NCBI GenBank assembly: GCA_025201805.1
Contig: MU619303.1
Coordinates: 1 to 64,000, forward strand
DNA length: 64,000 nt
Direction of reading: 5' to 3'
Source of the DNA: Parasitella parasitica NRRL 2501
Taxonomy: Eukaryota; Fungi; Mucoromycota
In this document: positions 951-23,421 of the stretch, piece after piece
How positions within the stretch are numbered: position 1 is the first letter of the stretch
How the letters are laid out: the number at the start of each line of letters is the position of its first letter
Notes under the pieces: generated by a model
The model's input: the letters and a program-made list of their open reading frames with translations, nothing else
Told to the model about the DNA's origin: nothing
Database searches by the model: none
Program-made: the position numbers and the translations under genes

Positions 951-2636
951 TGTTAAGGATATGATGTTGCTTGCAAATTATTCTTATCGATTAGTATCGA
1001 CTAGTATTTTAAATAAGTCCCCAAAAATTTATGTTGTTGTAAAAAGTATAGATAGCAGATGCAAAGTTGAATCTTTAATAAAGTAATCTCAAGTTTTCGT
1101 ATCTCGTTAATTCAACGTTTTATATTATACTTTTCTTATTTCGATCTTGCAGATCTCAACAAGCACAAAGTTAAGATGCTAGTTACGCAGTATTGTCGTA
1201 CATGTTTGCGAGAATAGAACATTTATCCACAGTTTAAGTATGTAAAGGTTCATCTACCTGGCCAGTAGATGAACGAGAGCTTGATACACTTGTCGATTTG
1301 ATAATAAAACCTATACCTTTATCAAGTTGACTTTATTGTTTTTTTATTATAATTTTTTTCCGTGAATCCATATAACAATTTATGCCGATTCCACAATCAG
1401 TTTAATAAAAATATAAACTCCATTATGTAGAAAACATTTTATTCCTTCGTCTTTTAATTTTGCTTTACGCCTTGCAAATAACAAACTGAAAAGCGTTTTT
1501 ACAGCTTTTAAATTAAAATCATAAATGATGCTGTGTTATACAAGTATCACTTCGTTTGCTACTACTTCAATTTTTTTATTTTTTATAATGAAAAAAAAAA
1601 AAAAAAAAATAACGTAAACATGGCTAGAAATACTCTTGAGCGCGGCAATGCTTAATAAAACCATTACATTATTAATGAGAATGCTTATTTTAGTATACAG
1701 GTTATTCAACAAGGAAGAATGGTCGGTCCATTATGAGCATACCATATGGTTACCATCTTATTTCGTCTCAAGAGCTAGCAAAACACATTCTCTCACATAG
1801 GATAACAGTTGAAATTTAGATACAATTGTTAAGTTTACCACGATACATTGTCTTGATGCTTTAGCCAGGTGCTTGCTTAAAAGTGTGATAGAGTACAATT
1901 ATCTAGTATCAAAAAGGTAGAATAATGTACTACGTTAGTATCAAGTCGGCATTTTTAGTTGCTAACATTGCTATCTGGATCATTACTTTATACTATATGA
2001 TATGCGTGTGGGTATTGCTAGACAAATAGTGATTATTGACGGCAATGTAAGGAGGTAAGTTTATGGTGATAAACTCCTTTATGATGATAGATGTGATCAG
2101 AAGTGGCAGATCAATTGTGATGGTAAAACTAGCTGGACTTTTTATTGTAGTAATAATTAAGATTAGAATAAAAAGAACCAGAACCAGAACTAGGTAATTT
2201 TACTACTGTTCCAATATCTGGCAAGAGTTAAACCTATTTATAATAATTGGATTTTTCATGTAAAATGAGACATCATGTAATGTGAATCATGACAAGATTG
2301 CAACTGAGAGCTTTATAAAGGTTGTTTATCTAGACTTCGTGCAACTGCGACACCCATGAGCAGATATACTTTATTAAGTTAAAAAAATCAGGCGTAATAA
2401 AGTATTGCTTGATATAAAGGTGTCTCAACTGTGATTGATTGTACTTTGACCGTTCACAGACGATTTTGTTATCTAGCTTTACACTTTTCTGCTTGGATTT
2501 TAATATGACTTTGGTTTAAACCGTAGAATTCCATTAAATTAGATAATGGTAGAATAATAAAAGGTGCCATTCGTCGCAAAAACGAAAATGATATTTGCTG
2601 GTTATATCAATCAAGACCAGTAACTANNNNNNNNNN

Positions 2637-2680
<44 letters not shown>

Positions 2681-2811
2681 CATCGTTATAGTTTAAACGC
2701 AAAGGTGTCGCAACCAAAAAAAATTGGCTAATTATCCATTCATCAAGAAATATTGGTATATGGCTTCAAGTTGTTACATCTATCACTCATCGTAGGTCAA
2801 CTTCCTTTTGG

Positions 2812-2818
2812 TCACGTG
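2812..2818 (+). promoter_or_regulatory. TCACGTG E-box (bHLH site) ~75 bp upstream of the BPL1 ATG
   Basis: Literal gTCACGTGt at 2811-2819; function is inferred only. Confidence 0.25.
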
Positions 2819-4911
2819 TAGTTTGTTTTTGCGCTTAAATTGCAAGGAGTGCTTTCGCTAGTTAGATCTCTTTTCCCTTCATTTTCTTCTCGATGAACAT
2901 TCTTATTTACAATGATCTCGGGGCATCACCCAACTCAGTAAAGCAAGCATACAATTCTCTGAAAAAAATTTTGGGTCATGTTTACGATATAATTCAAATT
3001 GATCGAAGAGTTTTACAAAGTGAACCCTGGGAGGAAGGTTGCGTTATGCTTGTCATGCCTGGTGGTCGAGATTTGCCATACTGTGAAGCATTGAATGGAG
3101 AACCTAATGCGCGGATAAGAGCATTTGTCCAACAAGGCGGTCGATATTTGGGTTTGTGTGCGGGTGCGTATTATGCTTCAGCGAGCATCGAGTTCGAAAA
3201 AGGTAGGGCGCTGATGGAGATCATCCAACCAAGAGAACTGGGATTTTATCCAGGACTATGTCGAGGTACTATGTATCCTGGATTTGTATATAATAGTGAA
3301 AGCGGAGCCAGATCAGTAGCTGTGAATTTGGACCGAGACATACTATCTCCATACTACGATGGTGACGATGTGCCCGTCGAGATTAATATGTATTATAATG
3401 GAGGAGGTTACTTTGTACTTCCAGAGAAACATGATAATGTGACAGTCTTGTGCCGATACAAAGAGCCTGGTAGCCTGCGTGAAAATACTGGATCTCAACC
3501 TGCAGCAGCAGTTGTGCATTGTAAAGTTGGTCGAGGTCATGCGTTGCTGATTGCGGCACACCCCGAATATGATATATCATCTCAAGACCTTTTACTTGCA
3601 GATGAGGGTGCTGTTGGCCAATCTATGAAAAACATGCTTTGTGATCTGAGCTTGTCTGAAATAGAACGAAAGCGCTTTCTTCATGCCGCATTTGCTTTAA
3701 TCGGTTTAGACGTGGTTCCTGTTGCAGACATCATTGTTCAAGAAAACAAAATACCAAATGTTGCGCCTTTATATTTCTCTGGTCTAACCAAGCAATGCGT
3801 GTTTAAACCCGCGTCCTATTTGCTGCGAAAAGCCGACCCCATAACTCACATCTTGGAGGATAGCCATGATGTATTTCACGTATCTGCACTAGGCGATGCT
3901 CCTAGCGAATGGGTACGTTTATTATCGCTATGTCGAACCCAAGAGCACAAACCTCCCGTGATTGAGCTTGTATATCAAAGTACCATTAATGCAACAGAGC
4001 CCATATACCCACCAAGATTATTAACTCCCCATTTTGACCTGGAAGAATATTTTAAGCAATTGGTAGAAAAGAGAAATTTGGAAGGGGACAGAGGCGGCTG
4101 GCTGTCATTTGGCAATGGTATATTATATTCTGAAATGGTTGCAAGTACACAATCCGTCATAGACAAGTAAGCTATGTAAATTGAGTCTGTGATTTAGTGT
4201 CATTTACAAATCTTTGCAGGAATTCTAGATTTTCTCAAGCATTACCAACTGGTTTTGTATGCTTGGCTGCAAATCAAGTAGCAGGTCGAGGTAGTTGATT
4301 ATCTAATAACAGCGTAAATTATGGTTTTGACTGAATTGGTAATGTAGGAAGAGGCCAAAACTCATGGATGTCTCAAGCTGGGGCACTCCAATTTAGCTTG
4401 GTTGTTCGACACAATGTGAATATTAGACATGCTCCCGCGGTTTTTATTCAATACATTGTAGCCTTGGCTGTGGTAGAAAGTATAAGAAAAAGAGCAGGAT
4501 ATGAAGACATACCATTGCGATTAAAGTGGCCAAACGACATCTATATTAATACAAAGTCTGGCGAATTAAAGGAGGTGGGAGGCCAATTGATAAATTCAAC
4601 AATTGTCGATGATGAGTTTGTGCTAGTGATTAGTAATAACATTTGAATTATGTTGGAGTGTATCCTATATGTAGAAAAAAACTAATATTACTTGCCTTTT
4701 TTTTTTTTAGGTTGTGGCATTAATCTATCCAATGCAGAGTCTATGGTATCCATCAATGATATCATTAAAGACCACAGCCCAGCAGCCTCTGAATTATCAG
4801 CTGAAGGTTTTTTGGCTGGGATACTCGTAAAATTTGAAGTTTACTACAATCAATTCTGTGAAAAGGGTATGGGACAGTGGTTCCTGCACAAGTACTGCCA
4901 GAATTGGTTGC

Positions 4912-9617: not shown

Positions 9618-12104
9618 TTTTTTTTTTTTGAAGGTTTTTATTACTTGCAATTAACTGTGACAAAATTTAAAAATAAACTAAAACGAAAAAGTGTTCAAAT
9701 ATCTCTGTAGAGGACTACAAGGAGCGGTGGACTTGATCCTCATCGATTGTTTTTTTGATGTTGAGACGGATGGCGCTGAAGATGGAAGATGGGAGAAAGG
9801 GTTGTTGATTGAAAACCAAGCGATAGTGAGCCTTCCAAATGTTAGCTAGCGTAAGCATGACGATGAGATGAGAAGGAGCTTGGGGCTTTTGACTGTAGCG
9901 AATGGAGTAGAAATCGAGGGAGAGGAGGGAGTTTTGTATATCACGTATATCGACTGTAGGCCAAAGGAATGCCGTGATTATATTCTGCCATACCATGGCT
10001 TTGGGCACAGAGGTGAACAGGAAGTGATCAACAGAATCAACAGTGGATGAGCAGGCGATACAAAGTGGAGACAGATGGATGAGAGGAAATAAGCGGTTGA
10101 GGAAGAACTGGTAAGGAGTGCAAGTATTGATGTAACGGTATAGAACATTGCGCTGGACCATTGTCAGGGTAAGGGACCAGAAGAAAGTCCAAGCAGAGGG
10201 ATCAATCGCACTTAGATGTTGTGGAGCAACAACAGATGAAGAGCACGCTTCTCGAAACGATCTAGAGCTGCAACGAGCTGTTGGGGCTTGAGGATCCAGA
10301 TCCACAAGTAGCTGATCAGTAAATGGACGAAATGATACTGCTGTTGAGGAATTGGTAGTTGGCGCGGCAGGATCACAAAGAGGAAGGAAGAATGGTTGGA
10401 TGAGAATTGAGCCTTGTTCGATGTCTGGCATCAGTTGCCGTGGAACTCGCTTCATAGCAATGAGGAATGGGTGGGCGGGGTCTTTCCAATGTAGGAAAAG
10501 CATAGTAGGATGCTTCTGGAAAACATCACCGACAGACAGAGACGCAAATCTCTGGGAAATTTGTAACTGCTGGTGGAGGCGGTGTATAGAATAGTTTGTA
10601 GCGGAAGCTTGAGCCCGGTAGCGTAGTTGATGGATACAAGGTCATAATCACGAGGCAACATATCCATGGATCTGTATAGCATGTCAATGGTGCTAGTCCA
10701 CCGAATTTTTGTAAAGGACCTGCGTGCATTGGGTAGTAGCAAAGGCAGTTGATGGAATTCAGTCTGATGCTGGTAGTTGATGTGCATCCATAACATGGCC
10801 AATAGAGGGTTACTGCTGGGGTTAAACGTTTCTATTTGCAACAATGACTGTATCCACCGGAAGTAGAGAGCAGCAGACTGCAGTTTGACATCGAGTATAC
10901 CGAGGCCACCTTGATGGCGAGGTAATATCCAGTTAGTCCACGGAATGGCAGGAAAAATGCCTTGTTTCAAGAATTGGATAGCGACCGAGGGAATCAGCCG
11001 GAGTTCCTTTTGGGTCAAAGGGGTGACTCGAAGCAAATACCAGCACTTGGAAAACAGTAGTGTGTTGACAACAGTGGCTTTACCAACCACAGATAATGAT
11101 CGACCAGTGTGAACCTGAATGTCTTGCTTAAGTTTTCGGATGAAGGCAGCAACAAAGTTGGTCCTCTGTTGCGTACTTTGTATCAAGGGAAAACCAAGGT
11201 AGATGAGGGGATCAGGATCTTGGATGGTATGCAAATGGTGGATGTTCATATCCTGCAGAGAACGGCTCCAAAATCGACTAGTGTCTCGACCAGAGATAGA
11301 GAAGGCGTCGACTTTGTTGTAATTGAACCGTGCGTTGGAGGCTCGACAAAATAGGTCCATATAATACTTCAGTAGACGAAGGTCCTGGCGATCATGTACA
11401 AAAACCAGAGCATCATCAGCATAGCACAGGACCTTGGTAGTGATCAGAGCCCGTGGCATTGACCGTGCGTTAGACTGCAGTTGATAACCATGGAAGTCTG
11501 GATCCTAAAATATGCTTTATAAGAAGAGTTCAAATGCCAGATCATAGCAGATACAGGAGATGGGGTCGCCTTGTTTGAAGCCACGGAGTTTGCGAACCTC
11601 ATCCGAGAAGAATCCATTAATGTTGATGCGGATACGGTTTAAAGCCATTAGATTGTATATAAATTATACAATACTTGCAGGAAAGCCATACTGGTTGAGC
11701 ACAGCTCGGAAGTAGGATAGGTTGACCCGGTCGTAGGCTTTTTCTTGGTCAAGAAGTAAGCCAATGTCTTTGTCGAGCGAGGCTATCGAGTCAGTTTGTT
11801 CAGCGATTGTCCAGCGGCGCTCGGCATCTTCCATGAGGATTTGGCAGCGCAATCCATTTTCAGCTATATACTTGCCAGGTATAAAGCCAATCTGTTTGGC
11901 ATTAATCAACTTGGGGGACACAGTCATCATGCGTTGATTGAGGACCTTGGTGAAGCATTTATAGTCGCAATTAGCCAGACTAAGGGGGCGGTAGTTGGCC
12001 ATAGCCTTTGAATCACCCTTCTTCTTGAGGAGGGTCATGATGGATTCATTCCAGGAGTCAGGGAAGATGGCATGGTCCAATGCTGCGTTGAATACCTTCA
12101 AAAT
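9618..12104 (-). mobile_element. Non-LTR retrotransposon (LINE) ORF2, RT plus zf-RVT; 5'-truncated and defective
   Basis: NYRPLSLANCDYK, QIGFIPG, LLDQEKAYDRV, QGDPIS, YADD, YLGFPL, GGLGI and a C-terminal zinc-finger region. Internal stops at ~11500-11665 and a frameshift at ~10480. Stop at 9715, then a 3'UTR and A-tail (T-run 9618-9629). Confidence 0.9.
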
Positions 12105-13490: not shown

Positions 13491-14056
13491 TTCTGCCTGG
13501 ACCTTCTTTTGGTCTCTGTCACTTACCAAGATTCAGCGGAATGTTATACCGTATATCGTTTCATTAACAATTGTATCGCTCTTGCACCGGATTTTTCCTA
13601 AGCACCATAGCTCGGACATATGTGTTGTGTGCTCTTCTACCTCAGATACTCTGAATCACTTCCTATTCCTCTGTCCGATATAGTCAAAAGCCCCGGGCAC
13701 CCTTTCATCTCATATTCATGATTACTCTGGCTAACATTTGGAGGGATCGCTATCAGTTTGTCTTTAACCAGAAGGCTCTTGAAGCCGTTGCCGTAATGAA
13801 CAGTATCCGACTCGACATCTCCAAGATGATCGACGAAGATCAAGTTCATGCTTCTTTATAGGCTCTCTATCTGTATCCTGTCTTTTCCTATAGTTTTTAT
13901 TTTATTTTATATTATCCTTTATCCATTTTATGCTTTATTCTTCATATCTTATCCTTCTATTCTTATATAATTGATGATTGCGCCCGCCGCTTGATTACAC
14001 TCAAAACTCTGTGATTTACGCGGAGCAAGTAATAAAAACCTTTGAAAAAAAAAAAT
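13491..14056 (+). mobile_element. LINE 3' fragment (same family as 9618-12104), internally deleted
   Basis: SAWTFFWSLSLT, LANIW and KMIDEDQVHASL* are shared with the first LINE. Ends in GCAAGTAATAAAAACCTTTG(A)n. Confidence 0.85.
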
Positions 14057-14879
14057 ACGATATTATGTTCAGACACAGTTTAGTTTGCTCTCTTTTTTTG
14101 ATGATGATGCTTGTTGTAAAGAAACGAAATGCCTTTCACTCTTGCTCGGAAGCACCATCTTTTGCCTGAGGAATATCCTTACTCAAACCAAGCGACTTTA
14201 GGATAAAGAACAGATTTTTTTCTTGTGTTCTTGCAGAAGAAAATTTGTTTTCTAGAAAATCTAGTTTTAAGACAATGCTGCAGAACTTCATCTTATTCCT
14301 TAAGAGTGACTCGATGATCAAGCTGAAAACTTTCCAAGCTCAATTGCAAACGAGTTGCTTCTTCGTTAGCACATGATTCTGCTCTATTAAATTCAAAGTG
14401 GCAACAGAAGGAAGAATTTTCATTTCGTCAGTAAAGACAAATTTGAGTAGTGTAGGACTAGGCTTTGTTTGATCTTGTAAAGAAATCTCTTCATGCTTAT
14501 ACAAGCTTTTTCCATTCAAGTAATCTATAGCACTGCTTATATTAATTTGATGCTTTTCTTTTTGTAAAACCAGCTTTCTATTTGGGAGAGTCATGCGCTT
14601 TTTCCAGATCAAATTGACTTCATATAACCCTTTTTATATCGATTCTTCGGTATTGGTATCTGAAGTAGTTTTCTGCTTTTGCTATCATAAGCATTCGGTA
14701 TTTCATCGAGTTGTTCTGCAAGAGACGCAAGTTGCGCTTGACAGTTTGCTCCAAAATAAAAGAATATGACTTCAAATGAAGAGCAAGATGAACGCGGTAG
14801 TAAAACAGACGAAAGTGGAAGAAGGTAATGAATGCTGAAGTATTTTATTCCAAGACATTAATTTAAATTATACGTCTTA

Positions 14880-15334
14880 TTTAATAGCATACATCCGTAA
14901 GAGCAACTTTACAAGGTACAGCCTCGCAATTATTTGTCTTGTTTTGGTTGAGCGTTTGAGCATTCAATGATTGCAGCCGTGAGATAGAACACCATTTGGA
15001 AGCACCTATTTTCTCATACTGGGATCGTAACAACAAGAAGGCCAATGTGGCCACCACCACACAAACTCCAGTTGTTCATGCAAATATGCTTTGGCAAACC
15101 GTCACGACTTGGCTCATCATCCATATTACCACCTTCAAATGTCATCTATAAGAACTGAAACCGCTGTAATATTGAGGCCGGCAGAGCAATAAAAACAAAT
15201 ACACGTTCTTGCGGCTTAAGTTGATTCAGTTAAACGCGCTGCATCAAAGCCAGCCTACTACACACTATAGTAGACAACGTATCTAGCGGTGTTTTGCGAA
15301 AAGACCATCATCTTTTAAAATCTACCGACTTTGA
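14880..15334 (-). mobile_element. Possible decayed Tc1 transposase N-terminal fragment
   Basis: Minus-strand fragments ILKDDGLFA, LSRKNV and RFAKAYLHEQLEF resemble the Tc1 HTH-linker region; they lie in broken frames. Confidence 0.3.
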
Positions 15335-16017
15335 NNNNNNNNNNNNNNNNNNNNNNNNNNNNNNNNNNNNNNNNNNNNNNNNNNNNNNNNNNNNNNNNNN
15401 NNNNNNNNNNNNNNNNNNNNNNNNNNNNNNNNNNNNNNNNNNNNNNNNNNNNNNNNNNNNNNNNNNNNNNNNNNNNNNNNNNNNNNNNNNNNNNNNNNNN
15501 NNNNNNNNNNNNNNNNNNNNNNNNNNNNNNNNNNNNNNNNNNNNNNNNNNNNNNNNNNNNNNNNNNNNNNNNNNNNNNNNNNNNNNNNNNNNNNNNNNNN
15601 NNNNNNNNNNNNNNNNNNNNNNNNNNNNNNNNNNNNNNNNNNNNNNNNNNNNNNNNNNNNNNNNNNNNNNNNNNNNNNNNNNNNNNNNNNNNNNNNNNNN
15701 NNNNNNNNNNNNNNNNNNNNNNNNNNNNNNNNNNNNNNNNNNNNNNNNNNNNNNNNNNNNNNNNNNNNNNNNNNNNNNNNNNNNNNNNNNNNNNNNNNNN
15801 NNNNNNNNNNNNNNNNNNNNNNNNNNNNNNNNNNNNNNNNNNNNNNNNNNNNNNNNNNNNNNNNNNNNNNNNNNNNNNNNNNNNNNNNNNNNNNNNNNNN
15901 NNNNNNNNNNNNNNNNNNNNNNNNNNNNNNNNNNNNNNNNNNNNNNNNNNNNNNNNNNNNNNNNNNNNNNNNNNNNNNNNNNNNNNNNNNNNNNNNNNNN
16001 NNNNNNNNNNNNNNNNN
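15335..16017. other. Assembly gap (N run)
   Basis: Run of N. Smaller gaps occur at 2627-2636 and ~63367-63416. Confidence 0.99.
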
Positions 16018-17268: not shown

Positions 17269-20200
17269 ATGAAAGATTACTACAATAAAAAAACGATCCT
17301 TATTACTGGCGCTACTGGATTTGTTGGAAAAGCTATATTATGGCAATTGTTAAAAGAAGCTGGAACAGTGATCGATAAAGTGTACGTTCTTATTCGCCCC
17401 AAGAGGATTCCGGCTGGAAGCCCTTCACAACGCATTTTAGATGAAATTGTCAATACCCCAGTAAGTTTTTCGCTGATGGTGCTGTCAAAAGATATTCATG
17501 ATTTTGCCTTAGGTGTTTTATAAGCTATTAAGATATTTTGATAACGACAAAGAAGCATTGAGACGAAAGCTAATCCCAATTTCCTGCGATCTATCTCTAT
17601 CACATATGGGATTGTCCATGGAAGACAGCATTCAAATGAAGGACACAAATATTGTTATTCATTGTGCGGCTACGTCAGAATACGAAAACTCGGTGGAATG
17701 GAATCTAGAGGTAAAGCTTGCTGTACATCTCGCTTTCTTTTCTTTCTTGCAATACTGATACCCTATTTTGTTTTTCTTTTTTTTTTTAGACAAATGTACT
17801 GGGAACTATTCGATTAATGGATTATTTGGATGGTTGCGATGATGTTTGTGAGTTTTGGCATTTTTAAAACGTTTGTAATATAACAGCTAATCCGGCCTTA
17901 AATAATCAGGTTCTTTTATTCACATGTCGCCCATTCATATATATCAAGATGCACCCGACGATAGCGATGATACTGTCATTTCAGAATACATTTATGATAT
18001 TGGACTTGGAGATCCTGAGGATTTTCTAAAGCAACTCCTTGGCGCAGATGAAAAAGGTATACAATAGGGTTTTTTTTTAAAAAAAAAGAGACGGGGACAC
18101 TAATATGCCTGCTGTATCACATACATATTCCAGAATTATCAGCATTGGTTAAGCGAATCTTACAAAAATTCTCGACATTACATCTATTCACAAAGGCACT
18201 CACAGAACACTTGATCGCGAAAAGAGTGAATCAAGTTCGAAATGTTGAAAATCAAGGATATCCCCTTGCTATTTTCCGCTCTCATTTTATAGGACCTGCT
18301 GCAGTAGAGCCCACGCCAGGCTGGACAACTGGCATGTCGGGTGTTTCTTCATGGCTGGCACTTTATGGTCATTCTATACCTATCATTCAGCCAGATCAAG
18401 GTCGACAATATGCAAATGTATTTCCTGTAGACTATGTTGCTAAATGTATTATTCACTCAATCCACACAATTAAATACCCGGGTCCTGACTTTGTTGCGCC
18501 GTTTGCTAATAATGTGATTAAGAGAAACTCGACAGCTATCTACCATCCCTATATATTCAACATGTCAACTTCAGCATTCATAAAGCCAATCACATGGTGC
18601 GAAGCATACACTGCCATTCAAGATTACTGGACTAGGCCAAGCAATGTGATTCCCAACAATCAAAAACTGCCTATAGCTGATAGCTATTTTTCCAGTAATA
18701 AAACTTTATCGAAAGCAAGATTTTTGATGCAATATTACTTTCGATCCTCTGCCAACAGCAACAGCAGTAACAGCGGTTTGAACAGCGTATTAAGCAATGG
18801 AAATTCCTCATTCAATTTATACAACGCTCCATCGCGAGACTACAACCAGCAGCAAGATCAGCAAAAATGGATGGAGCTGGCTTCCAACATCCGTAACAAT
18901 CTTGCCAGACAAAACCGTTATCCTTGGGAATACAATACAACACAATTCGATGCTTTGATAGACAAATTGGAAGGCATAGATGTTTTGCAAGACCTGAGTT
19001 GGCATAACTATTTTATGCAGAGTTGCCATGGCGTCCATGTCTACACTTTGCACTGCGGACATCATATGCGCACTAGTGTCCTGCCTTCATTTCAAGTATG
19101 CTCGCTGTACTCTCATTCCAACACGGCTTCTATTATCGACTCTTCGTTCAAAAGCGTAGTGTATACCGAGGAGGAAATGCGACAGAGAGTGCAATATATG
19201 ATTGCGACTGTGATAAGCTCGTTGAAAAATCCTGGGCAGTTTATACAAAATGAAAAGGAATGGAAGCCTATTTGGATCGAGTATCTGAACGACATGCTGG
19301 AAGATTGGTGCGACGAAGGGTCCATTGAAGCCTTGGAAATTAGCATGAAAAAGAAAGAAATTCAGACCAGGTGGCAATTGAAGGTTGACGAGAATAACGA
19401 AATGACCAAAGTAGCCGTTCTGAACGATCCCAGAGTCGGAAAAGCCATTCAGCAGGTAAAATGGGTTGACAGAGACTGAGGACAGACGCTAAAATATGTA
19501 CAAACTTCAGATTTCTGACAGGTCAGGTATGCCTGTTGAAAAAGTAATGGAGGAAGCTATGCGATCATTGAATAGAATCCAAGAGCGAACACAATTGCCT
19601 TACGCTTGGTTTGCTGCGACATTCCTTCAAAAGCTATTCAAAAGTATGTTTAGTGGAATTTACATTGACAAAGCTAGTCTAGAAAAGGTAGCTATGTATA
19701 AATTTGGTGGTTATTATTGCGACTCATGTAGCAAGTAGATCAGAGAATCTGTCAAAAACAAGCGTGTCGTTTATGTGCCTGTTTCCAAGACTACATTAGA
19801 CCCGGTTCTCGTGTGGTATTTAGCCATACGCTACGAGTTGCCTATCCCAGCGCTCGTTTTAGATGAAGCCTTGGCTATTTTGGGTCCCTTCTCTGACCTG
19901 CTTCGACTTGCCGGTGCAGTATTCATCAAACGAGACCCCAATACTAGGTCGACGTTAACTACTGCTGTCACTTCAGCCTACCTTCAACATCTCATGCAGG
20001 AACACGGCGCAATGACACTGATACTGGATAAAGTGAGATCAAGAACGGGCATCTTCCAAAAACCTTACCAGGATGGGCTTGTGGATATGATTATTGGCCA
20101 AGATGTTGTATTTATTCCCATCAATGTGTCATACGAGGAAGTACCTGATATTGTATTGCTGATCGCACAAGATTTGCAAACGAGCAAGAGGAAATCACAA

Positions 20201-21781
20201 CACAATGGCAACAATAATGGTATACAAAGATCGGCCTCCCATCGCATGTCGACACCTACCAAAGTGTCAAGGCCCAGCGAAAGTCGATCCCATCGTGTAC
20301 GAAGCCGCAGCTTGAATGGATGGCAAGAAGAACAAAAGACGAAGTCAGGAGCTGAGCAACAAGCGATGCATTGTGGCAGATTGCTTGTAGGTTTTGGGCA
20401 GCCAATTTCGGTGGATGGCAGTGTTGTTGGGGCGCAATGGGCGGATACGATCCAGAAAGAGCAAAAGAGAGCGACGGTCATCAGTCCAATTTCACTGGTG
20501 GCATCAATTTTGCTATATAGCCGAGTCAGAGGAAACTGCATTGATTTACAGACAATGAAGGACTATTTGGAGTATTTGCGCGTCTTTGTAAAGAGCCAAA
20601 GCATTGCAATGGATTGGCAAGGTAAGCATGCCAAGATAAAAAGGAGCATTCGGTTTAACAGATTGCGCTGTGGGTATTACAAAGACTTTGAAGACACGGA
20701 AACTATCATATTTTACAACATACGGTTATTGGAAAAGACTTCGAATTTGGTTACATGGGACGAACGAAACAGTGGATTTACGTTTAAAATTAGCACTAAA
20801 TCGGAAAGCATACTACAGCTGGCATACTACGCAAACCAGGTAAGCCTCTCAAGTGCTGTTTTGTGTGTAGCATGCTGCTAACGTTTCGTAACATCTAGGT
20901 GCGCGAGCTGTTTGTCTTGGACTCCATCTTTGCGAGCACTTATCTGTCATTTGGTAGCTTAACAAAGGTTGCTGAAATGATTTTTATCGAGAGATTCGAG
21001 TTCTTGGCAACCTTATTTCAGTATCACTTTGAAACGTCGTGGAACATTAAAGAGGAATACCAGAGATTGAAGCTAAAGTACCAAGAGTACATGGGCGGAA
21101 ACGAGGGCACTTTGGAGAGAATAGTAACCAAGGTCAATCTCAGTAAAAAGTACAACCAGTTTGGTCTGTTGGCATCTTTTATCTACCCCATCCTTGATTC
21201 GTTCTGGGTCACTTTGTGTGCATTGTCGTCGCTGAATGATGTCAAAGCCTTACCATTGTCTTTGGTACCAACCCTATCTCAGTGGATAGGCATGCATTTG
21301 ATCAGCGGTAGAAGAACCATCTACAGCGAGGTTCTATCCACTGAATACAATCAAAACACTCTACAGACTTTGGTTCAGTGGGGATTATTGAGTAAGAAAT
21401 CAACAAAGCTAATCCTCTCTCCCGATGCTCAAATGCTGATGCAGGCACTGGGACTATCTACCAATGAAGATTTGATCATTTTAGAGGTAAATCACTTTAA
21501 AAGCAGTGCATTCGTCCAGCCATTGACAGTATTTTTAGCATGAATCTGATGAAATTGCTGAACTGTGTAAAAAAGTTGAACAGCTACGAAAACGAGACGA
21601 AGACGACAGTTTATCCAGATATATTTACGAGAAATGCCAAAATCAAATCAGATCATTAGCCAAAAAGTCCACGTCTTTCAGCAAAAAGCAGGGTGCGACT
21701 GTAGTTGAAGAGAAAGAAGAAGCCATGATTCAGCTTGGCTATGCTTTACTACAAAGCATGGACAATAACGCTACCCTTTGA
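17269..21781 (+). CDS. Fatty acyl-CoA reductase (NAD_binding_4 + FAR_C) fused to a GNPAT/GPAT-like acyltransferase (FARAT-like), with catalytic residues substituted
   Basis: Ten exons: 17269-17460, 17513-17710, 17790-17847, 17910-18056, 18134-19455, 19511-19687, 19739-20621, 20685-20839, 20899-21486, 21539-21781. FAR motifs: ILITGATGFVGK, VIHCAA, TNVLGT, FTKALTEHL, PVDYVA. Acyltransferase motifs: GAVFIKR, RSRTG, IPINVSYE, LAYYANQ. Confidence 0.85.
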
Positions 21782-22028
21782 CAACGAGAATAAGACCACT
21801 GTAGTTACACGTGAACAATAGCGTCATTTGTACTGTAAAACATTCCCTTTTTCGGCAATCTGACAAAGAATCTTGATAGATTTATTAGGTGTAGTGCCAA
21901 AAGATAACATCATTGCTGGGCGATCCCAAACATTCAATTTTGAAACCCATTTAATAAAGGTAATTTACCAAAATGAAGTAGTTTGCTCTTCTTTACTGTT
22001 CTCTGGGGAGATAATAAACATACACAAA

Positions 22029-23421
22029 ATGGCATTATTCACAAGCAATAATTCAAGGTCTAAAGTCAACATACTTTTACTTTTGTTTGCAACTTTTATT
22101 GTGTATTGCATCTATATCATTTCATACAACCTGCCAACCACGACCACAGCTAGACATGAATCATCCACCAGCATCCCAACTAGAAACCCTAAATCTGATA
22201 TCTGCAAAACTGATCAGGTTCTGCGAAATGTCGATCCCAACCACACAAATGCTCATATCGAATTTTGGAGACATTTGAACGAAGCGACGATTCAAGTATA
22301 CAAGAAACGATGGCAAAAGTTTGTTTCTAGTGTCGAGCACACGCACATGCCTCGTGGTGTGTCGGGTCGAGGTATTGTGCTGGTTGCTGGCAACGGAGAT
22401 ACATTCGACCGCGCATTGACAACAATTAAATTGCTGCGACATTTGCAGCGTTGCAAGCTAAATATCGAAGTGTGGCACTTGTCTGATGAACAACCCTCCC
22501 AAGCAATGAGGCAAGAGCTTGAAGACTTGGGTGCGACACCAAGAGATTTATCAGATCCTCAGCTAGTTCGGCCCATCATTCATCGAAGAAATGCAGACAA
22601 GCAATTTCAAATCAAAGCAGCTGCTGTCATCAATTCTGCTTTTAAAGAAGTGTTATACCTTGACTCTGACAATGTGCCGGCTCAGGACCCAACATTTTTG
22701 TTTGACACGCCTGAATACAAATCCATGGGTGCTTTGTTCTGGCCCGACTTTTGGTATGTATGCTTGTGGACGAAACAAATGAACCCAAGTGACTTATGCT
22801 TATTATAGGAAAACTCATGGCGATAACAAGATTTTCAATGTACTCGACATTCCATGTGAGGATGAGTGGGAGCAAGAGTCTGGACAAATGGTGATTGACA
22901 AAGAAAAGTCTTGGGTCCCATTGCAATTAGCCTGGTACATGCAAAAGCATTATGAAATATACTTTCAGTTCTTGAACGGCGACAAAGATACGTTCAAATA
23001 TGCCTGGAAAGCGTTAAATAAGCCGTACCACATGGCAGAAGCTTTTCTTGGTATGGCTGGTACTATGGTCAATAATCGATTTTGCGGCCATACAATGCTT
23101 CAATACACTCCTACCAGTGACCAAGACGACGATCGAATATTGTTTGTGCATGCAAACTTGCTCAAGATTACCGACAAGAATCATTTCATCCATGGTGATC
23201 AGCCTGAGCATCCTTGGGATTTGGCAAAGAGATCTACCATGAATCATGCCAACACCTGGATTAAGCCAGAATTTTATATTTCGAATCAAGGGCAAGCTTG
23301 TATGGATTTCACTCATCGCCAAGGTGAACCAGATGCCATTACTGAAGATTTCGATTATGTTTTACCGGATTTCCAGGCTAATTACTTCAAGTTTGGGGGG
23401 ATCGGTGGCGAAACAAGATAA
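22029..23421 (+). CDS. Alpha-1,2-mannosyltransferase, MNN2/MNN5-like (GT71)
   Basis: N-terminal TM anchor, RGIVL, SAFKEVLYLDSDN, ALFWPDFWKT, EQESGQMVIDK, GDKDTF. One intron at 22754-22808. Confidence 0.9.

What the first reader, a model, noticed from the sequence alone, without database searches (positions are those of the whole stretch)
17269..21781. Fungal FARAT-like fusion in which both enzyme domains appear catalytically dead
Seen: one ten-exon ORF joins a full FAR domain to a GNPAT/GPAT-like domain. The FAR YxxxK motif reads HLFTK (His codon 18181-18183). The acyltransferase HxxxxD motif reads SKTTLD (Ser codon 19784-19786), and block III FxEGTRSR reads LDKVRSR. The nucleotide-binding TGATGFVG and blocks II and IV are retained, with no stops or frameshifts. 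Known: FAR-DHAP-acyltransferase fusions (FARAT) start ether-lipid synthesis in Tetrahymena and Dictyostelium and are not a standard part of fungal lipid pathways; atypical SDRs lacking the Tyr (NmrA-like) act as redox sensors. Inference: a conserved double pseudoenzyme that may sense NADPH or acyl-CoA, or scaffold lipid enzymes, or a relic of an ether-lipid pathway. The C-terminus -ATL is a near miss for a PTS1 signal.
Basis: partly seen in the sequence, partly recalled or inferred. Interest (0 to 1): 0.85.

Follow-up and report, generated by a model that had tools for sequence, protein, structure and literature searches.

The report
Conserved FARAT-like fusion lacking catalytic residues
This mould (Parasitella) gene makes one expressed, strongly conserved protein that joins a fatty-acyl reductase to a lipid acyltransferase, with the key catalytic residue of each half replaced; it belongs to an undescribed three-gene family of Mucor-like fungi that descends from ether-lipid enzymes but probably no longer makes ether lipids.

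Summary
Window 17269-21781(+) is one ten-exon gene. A perfectly matching spliced cDNA contig shows all nine introns removed. The protein has NAD_binding_4 (FAR), Acyltransferase and GPAT_C domains. It reads HLFTK where FARs have YxxxK, SKTTLD where acyltransferases have HxxxxD, and LDKVRSR for block III.

It is not a decaying copy. All 13 orthologues from nine other Mucorales genera have His (12) or Gln (1) at the Tyr site. Against Mucor, about 50% of third codon positions differ but only 7-13% of first and second positions.

The wider picture changes the reading. Parasitella has three such fusions. The other two keep the Tyr. None of 35 Mucoromycotina family members has the acyltransferase His (32 Ser, 1 Cys, 2 Tyr), while protist FARATs keep it. 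A separate Parasitella GPAT gene has intact motifs. No alkyl-DHAP synthase was found, and no PTS1 is conserved.

Best reading: a FARAT-derived protein that no longer works in ether-lipid synthesis and that probably binds NADPH and lipid without the classical chemistry. Loss of activity is inferred, not shown; the conserved His could still catalyse.

The scan's first readers noted the two paralogues on other DNA of this genome. No paper describes the family.

The parts
17269..21781 (+). Whole coding span of the FAR-acyltransferase-like fusion gene (10 exons, 1320 codons plus stop). The transcript reaches at least 21949.
   Evidence: The spliced cDNA contig covers 17276-21949 with 0 mismatches. 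Exon translations match P0065.
17269..17460 (+). Exon 1: start codon and the first part of the Rossmann fold, with TGATGFVG at 17305-17328.
   Evidence: NAD_binding_4 profile positions 1-47, E 1.7e-9. The joint 17460>17513 is in the cDNA.
17513..17710 (+). Exon 2: FAR domain continued (HCAAT segment).
   Evidence: NAD_binding_4 positions 52-104; cDNA joints.
17790..17847 (+). Exon 3: FAR domain (TNVLGT segment).
   Evidence: Sequence read; cDNA joints.
17910..18056 (+). Exon 4: FAR domain. The Ser156 codon TCG at 17927-17929 is the retained Ser of the Ser-Tyr-Lys triad.
   Evidence: S156 is invariant in 38 sequences; cDNA joints.
18134..19455 (+). Exon 5: end of the FAR catalytic domain plus the FAR C-terminal/linker region. 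The His215 codon is at 18181-18183 (HLFTK in place of YxxxK) and the Lys219 codon at 18193-18195.
   Evidence: NAD_binding_4 positions 170-258. In alignment A1, 12 clade-A sequences have H, 1 has Q, and K219 is invariant.
19511..19687 (+). Exon 6: helices that lead into the acyltransferase-like domain.
   Evidence: cDNA joints; conserved in A1.
19739..20621 (+). Exon 7: acyltransferase-like core. Block I is SKTTLD (Ser714 19784-19786, Asp719 19799-19801). Block II Arg763 is at 19931-19933. Block III LDKVRSR is at 20024-20044. Block IV Pro825 is at 20117-20119. A disordered Ser/Arg-rich insert lies at about 20183-20362.
   Evidence: PF01553, E 5e-9. Aligned to PDB 9vuq. The AlphaFold model has pLDDT 87-94 outside the insert. 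The best structural match is human GPAT1, 8e4y.
20685..20839 (+). Exon 8: GPAT_C region (LAYYANQ motif). The start is set by the cDNA, 9 nt upstream of the public model's acceptor.
   Evidence: The cDNA joint skips 63 nt. The Mucor orthologue has the same DFED residues.
20899..21486 (+). Exon 9: GPAT_C region with the family-specific motif HLISGRRTIYSEVLSTE.
   Evidence: PF19277, E 1.6e-10. These columns are nearly invariant in A1.
21539..21781 (+). Exon 10: C-terminal tail ending -ATL and the stop codon. There is no conserved PTS1.
   Evidence: Sequence; orthologue C-termini differ.

Best explanation
The gene encodes 'clade A' of a Mucoromycotina family of FAR-GPAT-like fusion proteins. The family descends from the bifunctional ether-lipid enzyme FARAT.

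Shown here:
- It is one spliced, expressed gene under strong purifying selection.
- The whole fungal family has replaced the acyltransferase catalytic His. It keeps the Asp, the block II Arg, the RSR-G of block III and the block IV Pro.
- Clade A alone has also replaced the reductase Tyr with His. It has also lost the Asn of PNTY and the Asp of PGWxD. It keeps the NADPH motif, Ser156 and Lys219.
- The genome lacks alkyl-DHAP synthase, and the protein lacks a conserved peroxisomal signal.

Inferred:
- The protein no longer starts ether-lipid synthesis.
- It most likely still binds NADPH and an acyl or phosphate ligand but performs neither classical reaction.
- It probably acts as a regulatory or scaffolding paralogue, possibly together with the two Tyr-retaining paralogues, in fatty-acyl or neutral-lipid metabolism.
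For: - Single spliced cDNA contig, 0 mismatches, all nine introns removed.
- Pfam architecture.
- Tyr column in alignment A1: 12 H and 1 Q in 13 clade-A sequences from Parasitella, Mucor, Thamnidium, Pilobolus, Choanephora, Rhizopus, Apophysomyces, Spinellus and Phycomyces, plus one unnamed. Eight Mucorales clade-B and ten clade-C sequences have Y.
- His column in A1: 0 of 35 Mucoromycotina sequences have His (32 S, 1 C, 2 Y). Thecamonas and two other canonical FARATs have HRSYxD and FxEGTRSR.
- Invariant or nearly invariant in A1: S156, K219, D719, R763, P825, R798, S799, R800, G802, G14, G17, G20.
- Paralogues in the same genome: C68 has YLYSK and VSKSLLD; C122 has YTFTK and VSKTIID.
- A standalone canonical GPAT gene on C31 has SHKSHID and FVEGTRSR.
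- Differences from the syntenic Mucor orthologue, counted by hand from the invariant-column lists. FAR part: 10 first, 10 second and 44 third positions over 90 codons. Acyltransferase part: 18, 9 and 70 over 138 codons.
- Parasitella-Mucor protein identity is 82% for clade A and 87% for clade C.
- PF01553 scores 27-36 bits in the fungal proteins and 71 in Thecamonas FARAT. NAD_binding_4 scores 131 bits here and 154-165 in the others.
- The four FAD-oxidase_C genes best match D-lactate or D-2-hydroxyglutarate dehydrogenase. AGPS is not among their PDB hits.
- C-termini are not conserved, while FARATs end -SKL or -ARL.
- The acyltransferase-like core folds confidently and best matches human GPAT1.
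Against: - No activity was measured.
- His at the Tyr site is conserved rather than random. It also occurs in Umbelopsis proteins that otherwise look like clade B. That pattern fits a working residue as well as a dead one.
- Full retention of the NADPH motif, Ser and Lys would be expected of an enzyme.
- Some atypical SDRs work without the Tyr (my own knowledge, not tested here).
- A partner role with the paralogues is pure inference.
- The AGPS search was a six-frame Pfam scan that scores only the best candidates.
- No phylogenetic tree or formal dN/dS could be computed because the script machine was lost.
Confidence: 0.55

Rival explanations
1. The reductase half is still an active NADPH-dependent acyl-CoA (or aldehyde) reductase. 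His215 serves as the proton donor together with Ser156 and Lys219. Only the acyltransferase-like half is non-catalytic and serves substrate binding or localisation.
For: - The GxxGxxG motif, S156 and K219 are invariant.
- His is fixed in 12 of 13 clade-A sequences and occurs independently in Umbelopsis.
- Purifying selection on the FAR half is as strong as on the rest.
Against: - Clade A also lost the Asn of the PNTY motif and the Asp of PGWxD, both kept in every Tyr-containing relative.
- One orthologue has Gln, which cannot donate a proton in the same way.
- The NAD_binding_4 score is 23-34 bits lower than in the paralogues and Thecamonas FARAT.
Confidence: 0.3
2. The acyltransferase-like domain still transfers acyl groups, using a non-canonical base in place of the block I His. 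This could be Asp719 with the neighbouring Lys, or a residue from the conserved HLISGRRT motif.
For: - Asp719, Arg763, the RSR-G of block III and Pro825 are all conserved.
- The fold is confident and GPAT1-like.
- Selection on this half is very strong.
Against: - No His is conserved anywhere in the acyltransferase core.
- The block III Gly is replaced by Lys/Arg/Gln, and in this subgroup Glu by Asp.
- The His is considered essential in this superfamily (mutagenesis of PlsB; my knowledge, not checked here).
- Entomophthoromycotina relatives erode a different block, which suggests the activity became dispensable in early fungi.
Confidence: 0.1
3. The gene is a decaying relic (unitary pseudogene in the making) of a lost ether-lipid pathway.
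For: The catalytic residues of both halves are substituted, and AGPS is absent.
Against: - The 1320-codon ORF is intact and correctly spliced in cDNA.
- Full-length orthologues exist in at least ten Mucorales genera.
- The third-position excess is about 5-fold.
- Synteny with Mucor is conserved.
Confidence: 0.02
4. The fusion is an annotation artefact and there are really two adjacent genes.
For: None found.
Against: - One cDNA contig runs in frame through exons 5-6-7, which link the two halves.
- The same architecture is seen in about 40 proteins of many species and in protist FARATs.
Confidence: 0.01

Closest known systems
FARAT (bifunctional fatty acyl-CoA reductase / DHAP acyltransferase) of Tetrahymena, Dictyostelium and other protists (PMC7375469, PMC13012113)
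   Same: Same domain order in one polypeptide: NAD_binding_4 FAR, FAR C-terminal region, GNPAT/GPAT-type acyltransferase, GPAT_C. It aligns end to end with Thecamonas FARAT at 22-23% identity.
   Different: - FAR Tyr is replaced by His, and acyltransferase His by Ser.
- Block III EG is replaced by DK.
- There is no PTS1, whereas FARATs end -SKL or -ARL.
- The genome has no AGPS partner.
- The gene belongs to a fungal family of up to three paralogues.
The two Parasitella paralogues (G000 C68:73491-77955 = P0089, and C122:82743-86958) and their Mucoromycotina orthologues
   Same: Same architecture. Block I is the same SKxxxD, block III is xERxRSRTG, and the same GPAT_C motifs are present.
   Different: - They keep YxxxK, PNTY (clade B) and PGWxDG.
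- They carry long N-terminal extensions.
- Identity to the window protein is only 34-39%.
Human GPAT1 (PDB 8e4y) and bacterial PlsB-type GPAT (PDB 9vuq)
   Same: GPAT1 is the best structural match of the modelled acyltransferase-like core (Foldseek E 5e-7, TM 0.62). 9vuq is the only PDB sequence match.
   Different: The solved GPAT 9vuq has HRSHMD and FIEGGRSR where the window has SKTTLD and ILDKVRSR.
Atypical, non-catalytic SDR-fold NAD(P)H binders (NmrA, HSCARG) and redox-inactive R* domains of fungal PKS-NRPS enzymes
   Same: A Rossmann/SDR fold with the catalytic Tyr replaced. This is a functional analogy recalled from memory only.
   Different: These are different SDR subfamilies. The NmrA Pfam hit is below cut-off and covers exon 1 only. 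R* domains have also lost NADPH binding, whereas this protein keeps GxxGxxG.

Membership tests
FARAT (bifunctional FAR + DHAP acyltransferase) | FAR domain N-terminal to a GNPAT/GPAT-type acyltransferase in one polypeptide | tested here: met
   Pfam on exons and on P0065; one in-frame spliced cDNA contig.
FARAT (bifunctional FAR + DHAP acyltransferase) | FAR catalytic Ser-Tyr-Lys (YxxxK) | tested here: not met
   HLFTK, with the His codon at 18181-18183. Ser156 and Lys219 are present.
FARAT (bifunctional FAR + DHAP acyltransferase) | Acyltransferase block I HxxxxD and block III FxEGxRSR | tested here: not met
   SKTTLD and LDKVRSR, aligned to HRSHMD and IEGGRSR of PDB 9vuq and to the FARATs P0035, P0049 and P0051.
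FARAT (bifunctional FAR + DHAP acyltransferase) | C-terminal PTS1 and peroxisomal location | tested here: not met
   The protein ends -ATL. Orthologues end -IIV, -TIL, -EDA, while Thecamonas ends -SKL and P0049 -ARL. Localisation itself was not tested.
FARAT (bifunctional FAR + DHAP acyltransferase) | Co-occurrence with alkyl-DHAP synthase (AGPS) | tested here: not met
   All four FAD-oxidase_C loci of the genome best match D-LDH or D2HGDH in the PDB, and none matches AGPS.
Extended SDR / NAD_binding_4 (PF07993) | Profile match above the curated cut-off and a GxxGxxG dinucleotide motif | tested here: met
   131 bits against a cut-off of 20.1. TGATGFVG lies at 17305-17328.
GPAT/GNPAT-type LPLAT (PF01553 + PF19277) | Profile matches above cut-off and a GPAT-like fold | tested here: met
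   PF01553 scores 35.7 bits and GPAT_C 89.7 bits. The model has mean pLDDT 77.9 and its best match is GPAT1, 8e4y.
Pseudoenzyme (conserved homologue lacking catalytic residues) | Key catalytic residues missing, yet conserved, expressed and under purifying selection | tested here: met
Pseudoenzyme (conserved homologue lacking catalytic residues) | Demonstrated lack of the ancestral activities | not testable with these tools
   This needs enzyme assays.
NmrA-like redox sensors (PF05368) | Profile match above cut-off | tested here: not met
   18.5 bits against a cut-off of 27, on exon 1 only. There is no NmrA hit on full-length P0065.

The most novel reading that the evidence does not exclude
Mucoromycotina (and, in a differently eroded form, Entomophthoromycotina) inherited FARAT vertically from the opisthokont ancestor. 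They lost AGPS and ether lipids, then repurposed the fusion. Up to three paralogues carry a non-catalytic GPAT-like module. One of them (this gene) is a doubly substituted NADPH/acyl-ligand sensor or regulatory subunit that controls fatty-acyl reduction or lipid storage in these oleaginous fungi. This would be a new class of lipid-metabolic pseudoenzyme. It would also contradict the published view that fungi lack FAR/GNPAT homologues except through recent HGT.
Probability: 0.3. Interest if true: 0.8.

Novelty: new variant of a known kind. Interest (0 to 1): 0.62.

Why it matters
Two recent papers disagree on fungal ether-lipid capacity. One infers from BLAST hits that Mucoromycota and other fungi can make plasmanyl lipids (PMC11225845). 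The other reports FAR, GNPAT, AGPS and PEDS1 absent from 53 fungal genomes and FARAT present only in a few ascomycetes through HGT (PMC13012113).

This gene family helps to explain both results. Mucor-like fungi do carry FARAT-derived genes, up to three per genome. However, all of them lack the acyltransferase His, one clade also lacks the reductase Tyr, and Parasitella has no AGPS. This argues against ether-lipid synthesis. It also shows that FARAT has an older, probably vertical, history in fungi.

The three natural versions make a ready experiment on how a bifunctional enzyme becomes a pseudoenzyme: Tyr/His in protists, Tyr/Ser in clades B and C, and His/Ser in clade A. The host organisms are genetically tractable (Mucor, Phycomyces, Rhizopus), oleaginous and medically relevant.

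Tried and rejected
- Script-based tree, motif table and dN/dS: the first alignment script timed out and the script machine was then lost. There is no phylogeny, no ancestral-state test of His versus Tyr, and no formal dN/dS. I replaced these with MAFFT alignments read by eye and hand counts by codon position.
- I searched exon by exon by reference and used the public model P0065 (3 aa shorter) for full-length comparisons.
- Decaying pseudogene and two-gene artefact: rejected.
- PTS1 near miss: rejected because it is not conserved.
- NmrA membership: rejected because the hit is below threshold.
- AGPS: looked for among all FAD-oxidase_C loci and not found. One search failed on an intron stop and was redone on one ORF.
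- Literature: searches for the family, for Mucorales ether lipids, fatty alcohols or wax esters, for locus tags and for His-for-Tyr SDRs found nothing relevant.
- tRNA scan of the window: none found.
Full report
**What is there.** The window comes from Parasitella parasitica (Mucorales). Exon translations are exact substrings of the NCBI protein P0065, 'male sterility protein-domain-containing protein [Parasitella parasitica]'. Reading the DNA gives a ten-exon gene from the ATG at 17269 to the TGA at 21779-21781.

A public run holds a 4148-nt contig that matches 17276-21949 with no mismatch and skips nine GT..AG introns. An adapter sequence precedes its 5' end. It is therefore cDNA, and the two enzyme-like halves lie on one spliced, in-frame RNA. 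The cDNA uses a 63-nt intron 7 (20622-20684), whereas the public model removes 72 nt. The true product is 1320 aa and contains DFED, as the Mucor orthologue does.

**Domains and motifs.** Pfam finds NAD_binding_4 (131 bits), Acyltransferase PF01553 (35.7 bits) and GPAT_C (89.7 bits).
- TGATGFVG at 17305-17328.
- HLFTK with His215 at 18181-18183.
- SKTTLD with Ser714 at 19784-19786.
- LDKVRSR at 20024-20044.
- C-terminus -ATL.

A solved GPAT (PDB 9vuq) aligns HRSHMD and FIEGGRSRTG to these positions. An AlphaFold model of the exon-7 core is confident outside a disordered Ser/Arg-rich insert (pLDDT 87-94). Its best PDB match is human GPAT1.

**It is not a lone decaying copy.** An exhaustive profile-free search with exon 5 found only 59 relatives. 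A word-indexed search with the Spinellus orthologue named them.

In alignment A1 (38 sequences) the window protein groups with 12 others, here called clade A. They come from Mucor, Thamnidium, Pilobolus, Choanephora, Rhizopus, Apophysomyces, Spinellus and Phycomyces, plus one unnamed metagenomic sequence, at 42-83% identity (59-83% among the Mucor-like genera; 42-47% for Apophysomyces, Spinellus and Phycomyces).
- At the Tyr column, clade A has His 12 times and Gln once.
- Ser156 and Lys219 of the triad are invariant, and the GxxGxxG glycines are nearly invariant.
- Clade A alone has also lost the Asn of PNTY in nearly all members (Spinellus keeps it) and the Asp of PGWxD.

The Mucor gene is syntenic, with a Mannosyl_trans3 gene downstream in both genomes.

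I counted differences by codon position from the invariant-column lists:

| Region | Codons | 1st | 2nd | 3rd |
|---|---|---|---|---|
| FAR part | 90 | 10 | 10 | 44 |
| Acyltransferase-like part | 138 | 18 | 9 | 70 |

About half of third positions differ, against 7-13% of first and second positions. I estimate roughly that dN/dS is of the order of 0.1-0.2. Protein identity between Parasitella and Mucor is 82% for this clade and 87% for the Tyr-retaining clade C, so constraint is almost as strong.

**The family context changes the story.** Parasitella has three such fusions:
- The window gene.
- C68:73491-77955 (P0089), with YLYSK and VSKSLLD.
- C122:82743-86958, with YTFTK and VSKTIID.

In A1 none of 35 Mucoromycotina members has the block I His (32 Ser, 1 Cys, 2 Tyr). 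This covers Mucorales, Umbelopsis, Gongronella and Bifiguratus. All conserve Asp719, Arg763, the RSR-G of block III and Pro825. Protist FARATs (Thecamonas P0051, P0035, P0049) have HRSYxD, FxEGTRSR and Tyr.

PF01553 scores only 27-36 bits in the fungal proteins, against 71 in Thecamonas. The acyltransferase substitution is therefore ancient and family-wide. Only the Tyr-to-His change is specific to this clade, and His also occurs in Umbelopsis proteins that otherwise resemble clade B.

Entomophthora and Conidiobolus relatives keep the His but have lost the RSR of block III, and Entomophthora has Gln at the Tyr site. As a control within the genome, a standalone GPAT-type gene on contig C31 has canonical SHKSHID, FIRR and FVEGTRSR.

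**Pathway context.** Canonical FARAT is a peroxisomal-lumen enzyme with a C-terminal SKL that feeds alkyl-DHAP synthase (PMC7375469). In Parasitella:
- The four FAD-oxidase_C genes best match D-lactate or D-2-hydroxyglutarate dehydrogenases, and none matches AGPS.
- Clade-A C-termini are not conserved (-ATL, -IIV, -TIL, -EDA), while Thecamonas ends -SKL and P0049 ends -ARL.

The protein is therefore very unlikely to start ether-lipid synthesis.

**Most likely mechanism.** Shown: the protein is expressed and conserved, its folds are intact, the NADPH-binding and phosphate-binding residues are retained, and the canonical catalytic acid (Tyr) and base (His) are both substituted. Inferred: it binds ligands without the classical chemistry and has a regulatory or scaffold role, perhaps with the Tyr-retaining paralogues.

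The main rival is that His215 with Ser156 and Lys219 still supports reduction. The fixed His, its recurrence in Umbelopsis and the intact cofactor site leave this open. The Gln in Apophysomyces ossiformis and the loss of two further FAR motifs argue against it.

**Novelty.** The proteins are in databases under generic names, or wrongly as 'cyclin-dependent kinase inhibitor far1'. I found no paper on the family or on its locus tags.

PMC13012113 states that FAR, GNPAT and AGPS are absent from 53 fungal genomes and that fungal FARAT is limited to a few ascomycetes by HGT. PMC11225845 infers ether-lipid capacity in Mucoromycota from BLAST hits. This family is relevant to both claims.

First readers of this scan had flagged the two paralogues, and the SKSLLD motif of one of them, on other pieces of this genome.

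**Limits.** No tree and no formal selection test were possible because the script machine was lost. Catalytic loss is an inference from motifs. The expression evidence is one assembled contig from one run.

Noticed in passing
window 20622-20693: The public gene model (P0065) removes a 72-nt intron 7. The cDNA contig removes 63 nt (acceptor at 20684), which adds the residues FED that the Mucor orthologue also has.
   Followed up: yes
L032 (G000 C31:109500-114500), about 1585-3994: A standalone GPAT/GNPAT-type gene has fully canonical blocks (SHKSHID, AIFIRR, FVEGTRSR, IVPISLGYD). It is the likely real PlsB/GPAT1-type enzyme of this fungus.
   Followed up: partly
P0122/P0021 (Entomophthora muscae), P0123 (Conidiobolus coronatus); alignment A2: Entomophthoromycotina FARAT-like proteins keep the block I His (THNSNVD, THSSSLD) but lack the RSR of block III. 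E. muscae has Gln at the FAR Tyr site. The acyltransferase half has therefore eroded independently and differently in another early fungal lineage.
   Followed up: partly
P0070, P0073, P0007/P0118 (Umbelopsis); alignment A1: Umbelopsis proteins that otherwise resemble the Tyr-retaining clade B read PNTHLFTK, with His at the Tyr site. This is either an ancestral state or a convergent Tyr-to-His change. It cannot be resolved without a tree.
   Followed up: no
window 21296-21346 (exon 9) and orthologues: The motif HLISGRRTIY(S/R)EVLSTE in the GPAT_C region is nearly invariant across all Mucoromycotina members but absent from protist FARATs. It may be a family-specific functional site.
   Followed up: no
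window about 20183-20362 (exon 7 insert): A disordered Ser/Arg-rich insert lies between block IV and GPAT_C. It holds a conserved RPS(E/D) core (S878 nearly invariant) and RVRSRSL in clade A, which looks like a phosphoregulatory loop.
   Followed up: no
names: Rhizopus and Apophysomyces orthologues are annotated 'cyclin-dependent kinase inhibitor far1'. This is a name transfer error from the unrelated yeast Far1.
   Followed up: no
window 21873-22808: The downstream gene is a Mannosyl_trans3-family glycosyltransferase, in the same relative position as in Mucor circinelloides (L038). In Mucor the upstream neighbour is a biotin-protein ligase.
   Followed up: partly
window 10001-12000 and 14001-16000: Composition outliers in the 2-kb profile: GC 0.47 with GC skew +0.22 at 10-12 kb, and GC 0.25 at 14-16 kb. 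Not examined.
   Followed up: no
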